A stretch of 64,000 nucleotides of DNA from NCBI RefSeq assembly GCF_032062105.1, contig NW_026941099.1, positions 62,001-126,000 of the forward strand, written 5' to 3'. This document shows positions 505 through 51,872 of the stretch, piece by piece; position 1 is the stretch's first letter, and every line of letters begins with the position of its first letter. Below the pieces are notes generated by a model that saw only the letters and a list, made by a program, of their open reading frames with translations, was not told the origin of the DNA and did no database searches. The stretch is from Saccostrea cucullata (taxonomy: Eukaryota). A program made the position numbers and the translations under genes.

Positions 505-770
505 CTCTTTAATGTTAAGATTCTACAATCTATTGACATGTCATTAAATCTCTAGTTGAAGGGTACATGTTGTCATTTTTACCTTTTGTATTGATCTATG
601 CGAGTAAAGGGATGACATTTCCCGTCTTACTTAAAAATGTTAAATTCTTCCAGGTTTATGACTCATTTTTTATTTCCATATTTTTTAACGGCATTTTTCC
701 AAAATAAAAAAAAACCACTTAAATATAAAAAAGGAAGAAAATCCTAAACATGTTAAGATAAGTAGTCCTA
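505..770 (+). pseudogene. 3' end and UTR relic of an upstream EGF-TM receptor paralog (copy A0)
   Basis: ctttaatgttaa...caatctattgacatgtcattaaatctctag...gcgagtaaagggatga aligns by eye to the stop/3'UTR of copy A2 (11675-11910) and A7 (39547-39790). Confidence 0.6.
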
Positions 771-2237
771 ATCACGTGACGCATAGTGGGTACAGCATTT
801 CAAACCTTCATCTTTATAATAATTTCAAATCTCAACTTTTAGACCTTCTACTCATAAGTCTCGATAAATTATTCTAGTAATTTAAATGATGTTAATATTT
901 TCTCCTTGGAAACATAGCTTTCTTACCAGAGGGTTGAATTACTAAATGCATATGACACATGAAGATTTATGGAATAAGGGAATACGATTTGACAGAAGGC
1001 CGGTGCTTTATTCAGCTAAAGAGGATACTTTCGGAGGTTAAAGGATTATAAAATCTTAATATGAATTACATACTACTCCACTTTTAACCTGATGACACCT
1101 GTGTTTTCTTCTTTGCACAATTTGAATAAATACTTTAGATGAACTATTGAGCTTTAATACAGTTTTTTTATATTCATAACAAAAATGCTAATTTTTTGTA
1201 AACTTCAACTTTTTTTTTCACCGTGAAGAGCTAGCGTGCACGTCTTTAAATGTAGAAACTTTTCCCAATAGCTTTCTGATAAATTCTTCATAATATTGAA
1301 TGCAAAAGTGTCTTAACAAAAATGATCTCTTTGTTTAGTTATCAAATGAAGTTAGATATAATTATAATTAAGTAATTGATCAAAATTGAAATCTTATCTA
1401 CAGAATTTGTTTTACGTTGGATTTCATACATACTGGTATGCATGATAGAGAACGTAATTTAAGAAAAAGTGGAGAAAACTCTACCAATGTTCTAATCTTA
1501 CTTTGTTTGATAAACACCAAGAAAAGTCCAGATTTGGATAAAGTTTAATAATATTTAACCAGATACATAAAAAATGATACAACTGTTAAAGACTCTGATA
1601 CTAGTAATTAGTCTCTGAGACTTAAGGTCAAGATCTTGTACATGACTTTAGACAAACTAACTTTGGTGCTAGATCTTTTATGACGTCATAATCACTTTCA
1701 ACTTTCTTTTTTCTGATAGAATTATGAAGAAAATAAAGTATTTTAAATAATTCAATTTGATCATACGTTATAAGATATGTACGAGTACATTCAAATCAAA
1801 TTCAGAGTTGGCGTAAGACAGGAACACATCTAATGCCAATAATAAGATATGAATGATCGAAAGAATGTTACATGTACTAGCTTTATTTAACTTTATTTAA
1901 TTTAAGAATGTTTAAAGTATTCATAGTGTAATATTTGTTGCATGTTTGGTGTTGTTAAAGCACAATCGGTTAATTTAAATGATACAAGTTATATTTTTAA
2001 GGACAATTTTAATCAAAAGATACTTAAGAATGTCGAAAAAAAATTATCGTTGTATTTTTCTGATAAATTGTGAAAGGAAGTAATTCATTGATTTTATATA
2101 CAGGAAATTTTTCTATAAAATGTTGATTGTTAACTAATCATATAGGAAGTGCATGTAAGAGTTGTTTATACATTTTTATATTTAAAAAGGAGAGCAAAGC
2201 GAATGATTGTGTTGGCTTCGTAATCCTACTATCGAGA

Positions 2238-3605
2238 ATGGCATGGAGATATTTTGTTTTTGTTTGTCATATGGTTATCTATTGTATTCAAGGAAATGAG
2301 AAAGACATTTGTTCAAATCCGTAAGATATCTTTTTTTTATTTTTAAGTTTATTTTAAAATTGAGATAAGTGTGTCATAAAAGCAAAGTTTATCCTTAGAC
2401 TACTTTTAGACTCAACGACGATGGATCAGGGGCATGCTGTTTAAACTTTTACAGGGATGGGGATGTCTGTAAAGGTTGTATGCAATACTTGATTTAGCTG
2501 ATTATTTATCAAATTTTTATGGATCAGTTATATGCTGTCTTATATATGCTTTCTGTATAGATTGAATACAATATTTGATTAAGCAATTAAGATAATCTAA
2601 TTACTTCGTGAAAGAAATGAGAAATGTATGCAACGTCCGTATTTTATAGTAGAATTTGACATAATGTTCTCAAACAATGTATGAGAACATTTACAAAGGT
2701 TCTGAAATTAATAAGCAGTTTACTTTTCAGAATGTCCACCCGGATACTTTGGATTTAATTGTTCTCACCCTTGTCCTGAACAGAGTTATGGACACTTATG
2801 TAGTCTGAAATGTACTAACTGTACAACCTGTAATCATGTATATGGTTGTGCACCGGCAACAGGTAAACCTATGAAATATTTGACATTTTTTCATTGAAAA
2901 TTCATTTACAGTTATTCAATTAGTACGTAAATCATTAACGCAGTAAAGAAAATTGTTTATGCTGTACATTTTAATACATACAGTTTCATTTTATTAGAGC
3001 ATATTAAATCAGACGTCTCTAAAAAAGGAAGTTGTAGCACTAGACCTGTAGCTGTTATCTCGTCGTCCATGCCATTAATAAACACATCAGATGTCCTTGT
3101 AAATAAAAGTTCCATCATGGTATCGATATTTGGTGACAAGACTGAAAATGAAAGTTCTAGTCTAGTATCTTTAAATGATAATAACACACCTCCTAGATTT
3201 TATCTTGCAATAATCATCTATACAACCGGATCACTTATATCTTTTGTAGTTGTACTAATAATTATGAGAGAAATACGTAATATTTGCCAGATGTCCTCTC
3301 CCACAATCAAAAACAAGCCACACAACAGTGGGTTCGTAGAAAACATATATTTTGAAGTTGCTGATGTTATTGATGACATTATTTCACGTGAAGAGATTGC
3401 CTCATCTATGTTAAACATAAATAGTTATGCCAAAGATGGAGCTTCCAAAAAATCAGAGGGTGACTGTAAAGACTATATTTATAGCACTGTATTTAGTGAG
3501 AAGGAAGAGACTGCCAAACCAAAATTATCTTTACAAACACCTAGGTTTGAGGCTAGCAATACCTTAGGCATATGTACTAATAAGAAAAAAAATGTTAATA
3601 AATGA
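2238..3605 (+). CDS. EGF-TM receptor copy A1 (MEGF10/CED-1/SCARF-like miniature receptor), about 295 aa; exons 2238-2320, 2410-2474, 2731-2862, 2998-3605
   Basis: GT-AG introns with consistent phases (2,1,1). Signal peptide MAWRYFVFVCHMVIYCIQG; CCLNFYRDGDVCK; ECPPGYFGFNCSHPCPEQSYGHLCSLKCTNCTTCNHVYGC; TM LAIIIYTTGSLISFVVVLIIM; NIYFEV and YIYSTV motifs. A frameshift near 3585-3600 removes the family C-terminus. Confidence 0.85.
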
Positions 3606-49026: not shown

Positions 49027-50310
49027 TTAAGTAACAATTACTATGGAACTTTTAGCATCGTATTTACTTGTTTTAGCCAGTTTTTACCTAACCTTTATAT
49101 TACTGTTCACAAAATATGAACAATTTTGTATGCTGAGATACACTTCCGTTTAATATTGTCTAACTTTTTAAAAATATGGTAACCTATACATGTCTTGCTA
49201 TTATTATTTGATTTTAACTTCATGTATATACCGTGAAAAAAAATGCAATTGGTCTATTTTGATCACACAAAACTCTTTTGATGGAAATACCTTAATGAAA
49301 TGTGGATGCTACTCAAAGAGCTTTGGCATCATACACGAGTATTTCAGCAAAATTAAAATCATCAAAACATAAAACGTTTCTCATTTTCGAATTTTGCGTT
49401 TCTTAAACCCATCTGTTTTAAACGATTTAAAGCTTAAACATCTTGTCATATGCAAACTTGCGTCATTTCATTATTAAACAATAATATCTAATACTGTAAC
49501 ACACAAGAAAGCTCTAAACACTGCACACTAAATAGCGCCGTTTATATGGGAGTTTTATACAGTTAGAGTGATCAACCCTTAGACGTAAGAGAAAAAAGGT
49601 TATTTAAAGTTAACACAATTTGAAATACATTAAAATATACGTAGCATTAAATCAGACCATGAATGATAAAAAATTTCATTTCTTCCATTTACTTTCCTTA
49701 TGTAAGTAAACAACAGTGATTTCTGCTCCCAAGTAGTCTATTGTCTTTTAACATTTTTCCTTTGGAAATAAGGTAGGTACCCTCTGTTGAATATTATCAA
49801 TATGCACACTTCTGTATAATATATTTTTCTCCAAGTCCAATCAAGTACTTTTTATTATTTTTTAGAGCTTCCTTAATCCTAGGTGATAAGCCAGGGCATA
49901 TTTTTGTCATTTCATTAAATAGACTTGGCTACATGTAACACATGTTTGATGGATTTTTCATATTTCCTGCACTTAATTAATACATAATTCTAAAAGGATG
50001 TGTATTTCCTAGCATTTCCTAAATGAAGTTGATCATTAAAATAAATGTTGGATTGATTTCAAATATTTTAGAGAAAAGCGAGTATGACAAATTTGTTAAT
50101 AAAAATAATGAACCTTAATTGAATTTTAACTCTTTTCCTCAAAAATATAAGGAAACATTCGTTGTTTTTCTTCATTTTGTTGAATATTGTAGAATATATA
50201 AGCGAGGGTTGAATGAGTTGACAAATGGTAAGTATTTATTTCATGTAGTACATGACACCAAAAAAATCAGTTTAACGAATTGCAATAATGATACCGAGAA
50301 AGAACTAACC

Positions 50311-51872
50311 ATGTTGATCGGACCTTTTTCGATCACTCTAGTAGTGAATTTGCTATCAAGTCTTACCATTAAAGCCTGCTCAATCAGGTAGGTGACCAAT
50401 AAAAAATTCTATTGTTATGCAATTTATGACGCAGTTTTAAAAGCATAATAAAGGAATGAATATAACTTTTAATTAAGAAATGCAACAGGGGGAGAGAAAT
50501 GCTGCACAAACTTTTACAAAGTCAACAACACCTGTCAAGGTAGTTATTTTTTTATATTATAAATTCTTTAGCTCTTTTATTTTTATGCCAAATCCTAATT
50601 ATTTTCTTAAATAAAGTAGAGTATTTAAGTGGTAGACTAAACAATAAGCCACTTTCAAAATCGGTTAAATGAAGTGTTGAAGGGGCGATCAATGTAAATT
50701 AATATATATGCGTCTTTGATTTTAGCCTGCTTTCCTGGCTATTTTGGTGAGCAATGTAGATTTGCCTGTGAGTATCCGTGGTTTGGACTTCATTGTCTAG
50801 ATAAATGCAACTGTTCAAAGGAATATTGTAATCACATAGATGGTTGTAAAGCAATTCCAGGTATATGAATGTGTCACACGTAACACATGAAGTAAATTTT
50901 GATTTCTGATTCTTTATCTTTTCTATTTAAAAAATTGTTAAGGAATTTTTAAAATTGGAAAGGTCAATTGAAAAATTCTTATAAATTGTTATCAACTATA
51001 TGAAAGCATTTTTTTCGTGAAATGCTTGAAAATGATTTTTTTCTTTTTATTTAAAGAAAACCCGACGACTCTATCAAAACACACCCCGGAAATCGGATTT
51101 GAACTTTTTTCATCTTATAATGGTATTCACTTATTTCTTACTCTTGCGTTAAGTACATGTAGAGCTTGTGTTTCAATCACTTTTGAATAACAATCATAAC
51201 TTTTTTTTTCATTTTTTAGTTAGAGAGATGACCTCCTTATCACCAAACTATAGTTTGACAAGTAATATCTCAGAAAATACGACTAATGATGTGATATCTG
51301 CAAAGGGTAACAGTTTTTTTGATAGAGGTTCTTATATTTTTGCTTTAGTTATCTTGTTTGGCATTGTGATATCCTGTGTAATATTTTTCACAGTTCAAAA
51401 AGCAATTTTTAAATGCAAAAGGATTAATGTTATTCAAAGTAGTAACGAAGCTTCCTCAGATATTTATATGGATATAATCGACAATATGTTAGTAGAAACG
51501 TTCGACGATTCAACCAATGACAACATGCATTTAAATATATATGACGATTCGGCAATTTCTAACGAAATTAACATAGCATTAGATGAAAACGAACCGACCA
51601 CCAGTCTTTGTAAATATCCTCCTGAAGAATGCGAAAAATATATTTATAGCGAAGTGATTAAAAATAAGACTATCAAATCCAACCATACTAATGAAACGGG
51701 AGAAGCGGTGAGTAGTAGTAAAAAAAAAGAAGAGTCAGTTAAAAGTGAGATTGGTATTCTCGATGAATGCATGCAAAACACGAACGATAACCCAATTGAG
51801 TCGATCTCTCAAGACACGCCGATTAAAGCATGTATCTTTGTAAATAAATTTACTGAATCAACTAAACTTTAA
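50311..51872 (+). CDS. EGF-TM receptor copy B2, intact, 330 aa; exons 50311-50387, 50478-50539, 50726-50860, 51057-51122, 51220-51872
   Basis: Exon lengths sum to 993 nt with no stops. Signal peptide, CCTNFYKVNNTCQ, 8-Cys EGF, TM YIFALVILFGIVISCVIFFTV, DIYMDI, NIYDDS and YIYSEV motifs, C-terminus TESTKL. Confidence 0.9.

What the first reader, a model, noticed from the sequence alone, without database searches (positions are those of the whole stretch)
505..51872. Tandem birth-and-death array of miniature one-EGF membrane receptors with tyrosine-motif tails
Seen: at least 9 co-oriented paralogs in about 50 kb share the exon plan signal (phase 2), CCxxF/Y (62-65 nt), 8-Cys EGF (132-138 nt), stalk-TM-tail, in two subfamilies. 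Known: a CCxGY-like motif before EGF repeats marks the CED-1/Draper/Nimrod/MEGF10 superfamily, whose members usually carry multiple repeats, whereas the Cys-rich module here is only about 75 aa. Inference: a rapidly turning-over immune or self/non-self receptor cluster, analogous to vertebrate paired-receptor clusters or Biomphalaria polymorphic transmembrane clusters. Automated annotation would probably call such genes MEGF-like or uncharacterised, so novelty is not confirmed.
Basis: partly seen in the sequence, partly recalled or inferred. Interest (0 to 1): 0.9.

Follow-up and report, generated by a model that had tools for sequence, protein, structure and literature searches.

The report
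Oyster mini SCARF1-like receptor array
A rock oyster carries a long tandem row of small, uncharacterised membrane-receptor genes, each a cut-down version of the class F scavenger receptor with tyrosine and PDZ-type signals in its tail; the copies are born and die quickly, like snail gene clusters linked to parasite resistance, but no immune role is shown yet.

Summary
Real. Nine co-oriented copies lie at 2.2-51.9 kb (seven with the first three exons, two relics), the downstream half of an array of about 20 copies over 95 kb in Saccostrea cucullata. RNA-type contigs splice both tested introns exactly as modelled. Only B2 is full length; A1, A2 and A5 keep the membrane helix but lose the tail end; the rest are broken. 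The 'one EGF' is not one EGF: the ectodomain is human SCARF1's N-terminus with about 22 residues removed. It keeps the segment that forms SCARF1's dimer contact and lacks SCARF1's LDL/teichoic-acid site. Nimrod (CCxGY, NIM) and Draper (EMI, NPxY) features fail. Tails keep two Tyr motifs and a C-terminal PDZ-type motif, also in an independently expanded Ostrea edulis array (no 1:1 orthologs). dN/dS is about 0.6 in every region: weak purifying selection, no ectodomain hot spot. No activating/inhibitory pairing here. The module recurs in at least 150 places genome-wide; the scan already noted the upstream half and sister arrays. Closest known system: the Biomphalaria LG5R 'scavenger class F-like' cluster. 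New variant of a known kind; function inferred.

The parts
505..760 (+). Displaced last codons and 3' flank of the preceding copy (upstream of the window), cut off by an insertion
2238..3810 (+). Copy A1 (RefSeq LOC134257196): exons 2238-2320, 2410-2474, 2731-2862, 2998-; stop at 3603-3605 after a 2-nt loss in an A run, 295 aa, tail end and PDZ motif lost in this assembly
   Evidence: splice joints and +2 nt at 3584-3590 in RNA contigs of three runs
6045..6294 (.). Assembly gap, intergenic; its flanks are collinear with the paralogous segment 35998-37042
10214..11680 (+). Copy A2 (LOC134257200): exons 10214-10293, 10377-10441, 10624-10755, 10896-; early TAG 11546-11548 (309 aa), one module Cys replaced by Arg, second Tyr lost
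13370..15712 (+). Copy A3: exons 13370-13449, 13539-13603, 13766-13903, 14934-; frameshift before the membrane helix (137 aa) and many stops: pseudogene or secreted fragment
   Evidence: an exon1-exon2 junction of A3 type is seen as a loose end
21019..21150 (+). Copy A4: frameshifted relic of the 8-Cys exon
27306..29878 (+). Copy A5: exons 27306-27385, 27480-27544, 28622-28753, 28893-; tail split at the first Tyr motif by a 207-nt MITE (29203-29409, inverted ends, TA duplication); 214 aa
30635..32449 (+). Copy A6: last exon only, split by a ~1 kb insertion (31135-32114) at the second Tyr motif; ends in the PDZ-type motif
32985..33115 (.). Assembly gap, intergenic between A6 and A7; continuity across it not proven
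38094..39553 (+). Copy A7: exons 38094-38173, 38253-38317, 38494-38625, 38766-; single 1-nt loss near an A run at about 38790, otherwise open; 91% identical to A2 (segmental duplication of about 4.9-11.9 kb and 35.6-39.8 kb)
43295..45290 (+). Copy B1: exons 43295-43377, 43463-43524, 44373-44507, 44706-44759, last exon relic from 45143 with stop and frameshift, lost inside the membrane helix: pseudogene
50311..51872 (+). Copy B2, the only full-length gene in the window (330 aa): exons 50311-50387, 50478-50539, 50726-50860, 51057-51122, 51220-51872; two Tyr motifs, C-terminal T-K-L
   Evidence: omega 0.41 against its counterpart on C6733

Best explanation
A lineage-specific tandem expansion of miniature class F scavenger (SCARF1/MEGF10-type) single-pass receptors. 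Shown: genes, splicing, exon plan, homology of the 12-Cys, ~70-aa head to the SCARF1 N-terminus (CC cap joined directly to SCARF1 residues ~77-118), a 55-70 aa Ser/Thr-rich stalk with 4-6 N-glycosylation sites, one membrane helix, a disordered tail with D/E-x-I-Y-x-E-V/I about 25-30 aa below the membrane, a second Y-S-T/E-V and a C-terminal S/T-x-hydrophobic motif, all kept between Saccostrea and Ostrea; turnover by unequal crossover, segmental duplication and transposon damage. Inferred: the head, held out on a mucin-like stalk, binds a cell-surface partner (microbial or damaged-self ligand, or another family member through the surface that dimerises SCARF1); clustering lets Src-family kinases phosphorylate the Tyr motifs for SH2 readers, and a PDZ scaffold places the receptor. 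Most likely setting: hemocyte or mucosal recognition.
For: Profile of 70 heads hits Tie2 EGF region (E 2e-8) and SCARF1 (E 1.7e-5) with both the CC cap and the 8-Cys exon aligned; best fold match SCARF1 77-133 in the same register, though weak, Z 3.0. SCARF1 dimer residues F82/S88/Y94 fall in the kept segment and the LDL/teichoic-acid site (133-221, 137-250) outside it (PMC11563577). Tyr motifs in 54 family tails: YxxI/L/V 136 vs 51 shuffled, D/E-xx-Y-x-D/E-I/L/V 18 vs 1.4. Motifs kept in O. edulis. Whole-gene omega 0.62, 2dlnL 36.7 against 1. Dozens of draper-like/MEGF genes are hemocyte-enriched in Crassostrea virginica (PMC13070813); a cluster of the same build lies under a schistosome-resistance peak in Biomphalaria (PMC13712769).
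Against: No ligand, tissue or induction data for these genes. No ectodomain excess of amino-acid change (Cys module omega 0.66, 0.80 without Cys codons; B 0.30). No tandem ITAM, ITIM or NPxY in the window's tails. Most copies are damaged. Papers concern relatives, not these genes.
Confidence: 0.55

Rival explanations
1. Cell-cell adhesion or self-recognition code: the heads bind each other in cis or trans through the retained SCARF1 dimer surface, and copy-specific residues give specificity (cell sorting, allorecognition, gamete recognition) rather than pathogen sensing.
For: The kept segment is SCARF1's dimer surface, not its ligand site; the positions matching S88 and Y94 vary among copies while F82 is kept in 8 of 10; PDZ-type end typical of junctional proteins (own knowledge).
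Against: No binding data; Y94, needed for SCARF1 dimers, is kept in only 3 of 10 copies; no oyster allorecognition locus is tied to it.
Confidence: 0.2
2. Mostly neutral churn: one or two functional genes (B2-like, a few A) plus many redundant copies drifting to pseudogenes in an unstable repeat region; diversity has no adaptive meaning.
For: 8 of 9 window copies truncated or broken; omega uniform near 0.6 across domains, as expected from mixing constrained and relaxed branches; non-Cys head codons not distinguishable from neutral.
Against: omega significantly below 1 overall; motifs conserved to Ostrea; many distinct paralog transcripts in RNA runs; the same expansion arose independently in two genera.
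Confidence: 0.2
3. Paired activating/inhibitory receptor complex as in vertebrates.
For: Tandem array with Tyr tails and possible secreted short forms (A3, A7); ITAM-like pairs enriched in other subfamilies (16 vs 1.1).
Against: A and B tails carry the same motif set; ITIM not enriched (21 vs 13, within shuffle range); no short-tail copy with a charged mid-membrane residue apart from damaged ones.
Confidence: 0.05

Closest known systems
Human SCARF1/SREC-I (class F scavenger receptor; PDB 8HN0, 8HNA)
   Same: Signal, Cys + CC cap, then the C-x-x-G-F-F-G-x-x-C / C-P-x-x-x-Y/W-G-x-x-C / C-x-C block in ungapped register; type I membrane protein with long disordered tail
   Different: About 22 residues after the cap and everything after residue ~118 are missing, including the LDL/teichoic-acid site; CCxN instead of CCxG; Ser/Thr stalk; multi-copy array
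[quoted passage not shown]
   Same: Mollusc tandem cluster of signal + Tie2/MEGF-type EGF module + single helix + domain-less tail, with gene fragments and content differences
   Different: Genetic link to parasite resistance exists there, not here; many snail members add lectin or phosphatase domains; direct homology to these genes not tested
CED-1/Draper/MEGF10/PEAR1
   Same: PEAR1/MEGF-type EGF exon (weak PF23301 in 5 of 70; Atlas neighbours 0.82-0.85), Tyr-motif tail
   Different: No EMI domain, no repeat run, no NPxY, no tandem ITAM in this subfamily
Oyster 'protein draper-like / MEGF10-like / uncharacterised' RefSeq family
   Same: Same superfamily; relatives carry these automatic names
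   Different: No paper found that defines the one-module form or this subfamily

Membership tests
Nimrod superfamily | CCxGY motif before the first repeat (PMC4073527) | tested here: not met
   Consensus of 70 heads is CCxNY; window copies CCLNF, CCYNS, CCINF, CCLNY, CCTHF, CCTNF
Nimrod superfamily | NIM repeat CxPxCxxxCxNGxCxxPxxCxCxxGY | tested here: not met
   Cys spacing does not fit
CED-1/Draper/MEGF10 | N-terminal EMI domain | tested here: not met
   No PF07546 hit in 70 members or in P0001/P0002
CED-1/Draper/MEGF10 | Multiple EGF-like repeats | tested here: not met
   One 8-Cys exon per gene
CED-1/Draper/MEGF10 | NPxY in tail (PMC8092387) | tested here: not met
   1 in 54 family tails vs 0.9 shuffled; none in window copies
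CED-1/Draper/MEGF10 | ITAM or YxxL-type motif | tested here: inconclusive
   Single YxxV/I motifs conserved, about 45 aa apart, not a tandem ITAM; ITAM-like pairs in 12 of 54 wider-family tails
SCARF1/SREC class F | SCARF-type N-terminal CC cap and EGF block | tested here: met
   Profile alignment to 8HNA, E 1.7e-5; fold match same register, Z 3.0, weak
SCARF1/SREC class F | Long multi-EGF ectodomain with the modified-LDL/teichoic-acid site | tested here: not met
   Homology ends near residue 118; site lies at 133-250
SCARF1/SREC class F | Scavenger ligand binding | not testable with these tools
   Needs binding assay
Birth-and-death multigene family | Pseudogenes plus species-specific clades, no 1:1 orthology | tested here: met
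   Saccostrea A clade 100/100, Ostrea clade 100/99, sisters at 86/74; lesions. Concerted evolution not excluded
Polymorphic transmembrane cluster (Biomphalaria PTC/LG5R) | Dense cluster of single-pass genes | tested here: met
   About 20 copies in 95 kb
Polymorphic transmembrane cluster (Biomphalaria PTC/LG5R) | Highly divergent haplotypes with presence/absence | tested here: inconclusive
   C6733 is collinear from B2 onward but has other A copies; pS about 0.26, so a deep haplotype or a segmental paralog
Polymorphic transmembrane cluster (Biomphalaria PTC/LG5R) | Genetic association with resistance | not testable with these tools
   No population or challenge data
Vertebrate-type paired receptors | Shared ectodomain with opposite ITIM vs adaptor/ITAM tails | tested here: not met
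   Same tail motifs in A and B; ITIM not enriched

The most novel reading that the evidence does not exclude
Oysters have reduced a class F scavenger receptor to its dimerisation segment and multiplied it into hundreds of haplotype-variable copies that act as a combinatorial cell-surface recognition code (self/non-self or pathogen matching), with C6733 and C23236 as two old, content-divergent haplotypes of one locus.
Probability: 0.12. Interest if true: 0.8.

Novelty: new variant of a known kind. Interest (0 to 1): 0.42.

Why it matters
Pfam misses these genes entirely and RefSeq calls them uncharacterised, so a large receptor family of farmed oysters is invisible in immune-gene surveys. A cluster of similar build sits under a parasite-resistance peak in snails, so this locus is a concrete candidate for disease-resistance mapping in oysters. 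The precise mapping onto SCARF1 gives a testable question: does the head bind ligands or other family members?

Tried and rejected
Pfam on single exons and full proteins: nothing above noise. Single-sequence PDB search: only EphA2 at E>0.6. Foldseek: no match at E<=0.001; TNFR/Eph rows treated as generic Cys ladders. Word-index homolog searches found only the RefSeq models of this contig or nothing. Artefact of haplotype scaffolding across the gaps: A2 and A7 are 91% identical with different neighbours and a third copy on C23224 at 85%, so duplication is likelier than allelism, but continuity over 32985-33115 is unproven. Ectodomain positive selection: not seen at domain level; no site models were available. 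Literature searches found no description of this one-module family. Spliced models were searched exon by exon by reference; my own joined models stayed inside scripts, and whole-protein searches used the RefSeq proteins returned by the tools. Gaps were not filled. One search failed on a frame slip and was redone.
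Full report
Observation. Six-frame translation and self-BLAST show nine co-oriented copies between 2.2 and 51.9 kb. Status: A1 295 aa (2-nt loss in an A run, tail end lost), A2 309 aa (early TAG, one Cys lost), A3 frameshifted before the helix, A4 an exon-3 relic, A5 cut by a 207-nt MITE at the first Tyr motif, A6 a last exon split by an insertion, A7 a single 1-nt loss, B1 truncated in the helix, B2 complete at 330 aa. 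Position 505 is the displaced end of a further copy upstream. Both N gaps are intergenic and affect no model; they were not filled, and continuity across the second is not proven.

Expression. Contigs of four RNA or probable-RNA runs laid on 1800-4400 cover exons far more than introns and show joints 2474 to 2731 (two runs) and 2862 to 2998 (three runs), both GT-AG; loose ends show exon 1-exon 2 junctions of A2/A7 and A3 type. Three runs carry two extra bases at 3584-3590, so the A1 truncation is an assembly error or private allele. Three of the four runs are RNA only by guess, most contigs are paralogs or alleles under 95% identical, and tissue is unknown.

Identity and extent. The genome is Saccostrea cucullata; RefSeq has A1 and A2 as uncharacterised LOC134257196 and LOC134257200, A1 letter for letter my model. 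The array continues upstream with about 12 more copies from contig position 20.3 kb, three of them full length (352-373 aa), so about 20 copies in 95 kb. The A tail also occurs on C23224, C6733 and C19531; the B tail only here and on C6733. The 8-Cys exon has at least 146-150 scored matches on scores of contigs, from about 1,500 candidates; these include multi-EGF genes. A full-library search gave 399 clusters at 50% identity; many have the same one-module build; named ones come from S. cucullata, S. echinata and Ostrea edulis; Atlas look-alikes at 0.94-0.95 are unnamed mollusc clusters.

What the head is. Pfam does not see it (weak PEAR1-type EGF in 5 of 70). A profile of 70 heads hits Tie2's EGF region (E 2e-8) and SCARF1 (E 1.7e-5). 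Against SCARF1 the CC exon aligns to the N-terminal CC cap and the 8-Cys exon aligns to residues 77-117, ungapped over 77-99 (numbering checked against D61, K71, R76, F82, S88, Y94, D98 in PMC11563577). The AlphaFold model (pLDDT 79) finds SCARF1 77-133 as top structural match in the same register, weakly (Z 3.0; Foldseek nothing at E 0.001). So the head is SCARF1's N-terminus with about 22 residues removed and cut at about residue 118: the end of one EGF, a two-Cys mini repeat and the start of the next, not one EGF. SCARF1 dimerises through F82, S88 and Y94, inside the kept part, and binds modified LDL and teichoic acid at 133-250, outside it. F82 is kept in 8 of 10 A copies; the S88 and Y94 positions vary. 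The cap is CCxN, not CCxGY, with no NIM repeat (PMC4073527), EMI or NPxY (PMC8092387), so Nimrod and Draper membership fail.

Tail. Across 54 family tails YxxI/L/V occurs 136 times against 51 shuffled, the acidic form 18 against 1.4, ITAM-like pairs 16 against 1.1, ITIM 21 against 13 (not significant), NPxY once. In this subfamily three short motifs persist in an otherwise fast-changing tail: an acidic Y-x-E-V/I about 25-30 aa below the membrane, Y-S-T/E-V, and a terminal F/Y-V-N ... T-x-L/F end. All three are shared by A, B and O. edulis members. From general knowledge these fit Src-kinase/SH2 sites and a class I PDZ ligand; this is inference. A and B do not differ in motif type, so there is no paired-receptor signature.

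Evolution. O. edulis has tandem A-like copies, and a B-like gene, on one chromosome. Codon models on ten open copies give omega 0.62 overall (2dlnL 36.7 against 1) and 0.61-0.69 in each region, 0.80 for non-Cys head codons. B2 against its C6733 counterpart gives 0.41 (head 0.30, tail 0.27). C6733 is collinear with the window from B2 through the next gene but has different copies upstream; with pS near 0.26 in both B and the neighbour it is a deep haplotype or a segmental paralog, undecided.

Mechanism and comparison. Best reading (0.55): miniature class F scavenger-type recognition receptors on a glycosylated stalk, signalling by Tyr phosphorylation and PDZ anchoring, probably in hemocytes or mucosa. 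Support is by analogy: dozens of draper-like and MEGF genes are enriched in eastern oyster hemocytes (PMC13070813), and the Biomphalaria LG5R resistance region holds a cluster of signal + Tie2/MEGF-type module + helix + domain-less tail genes with fragments and presence/absence (PMC13712769). Rivals: an adhesion or self-recognition code through the kept dimer surface (0.2), largely neutral churn around a few working genes (0.2), vertebrate-type paired receptors (0.05).

Verdict. Real, transcribed and uncharacterised, but one subfamily of a large oyster-wide family whose kind, a tandem cluster of SCARF/MEGF-like single-pass genes, is already described in molluscs, and which this scan has noted next door (s1-711498) and elsewhere. 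What is new here is the minimal build, its exact mapping onto SCARF1's dimer segment and the conserved three-motif tail. New variant of a known kind; interest 0.42. Joined models were not typed into search tools; whole-protein searches used tool-returned RefSeq proteins.

Noticed in passing
window 53697-59219 and beyond, minus strand: Multi-exon single-pass membrane gene, tail-to-tail with B2, Cys-containing ectodomain with no Pfam hit; collinear copy on C6733 (98% in one exon), paralogs on C6645 and C14024; C6645 also carries several EGF-module exons, so the two families may travel together
   Followed up: partly
window 29203-29409: 207-nt MITE with inverted ends and TA duplication, inserted exactly at the first Tyr motif of A5
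   Followed up: partly
window 8170-9700: Insertion upstream of A2 (absent from the A7 segment) with a 45-nt direct repeat, a 78-nt tandem repeat and a 199-codon low-complexity open frame; probable mobile element
   Followed up: no
window 22200-23870: Frameshifted frame resembling an SGNH/GDSL-type hydrolase (from motifs, not tested) followed by a 265-nt tandem repeat; probable mobile-element cargo
   Followed up: no
G000:C23236:2320-3765 (L006): B-box zinc-finger (TRIM-like) gene followed by an HSPA12-like start, upstream of the array; multi-copy in the genome
   Followed up: partly
G000:C23236:13646-14107 (L001): Exon with a membrane helix resembling the family's, possibly a third subfamily upstream
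   Followed up: no
RefSeq LOC134257199, LOC134257198 (P0003, P0004): Automatic models that fuse two neighbouring copies into one protein; probably annotation errors
   Followed up: no
window 13370-15065 and 38094-38887: A3 and A7 break inside the last exon before the helix, so any transcript could escape nonsense decay and give a secreted 132-137 aa head (possible decoy); untested
   Followed up: no
P0005 (Ostrea edulis, 2285 aa): A protein with about 20-40 tandem copies of the same CC + 8-Cys unit, showing the unit also acts as a repeat module
   Followed up: no
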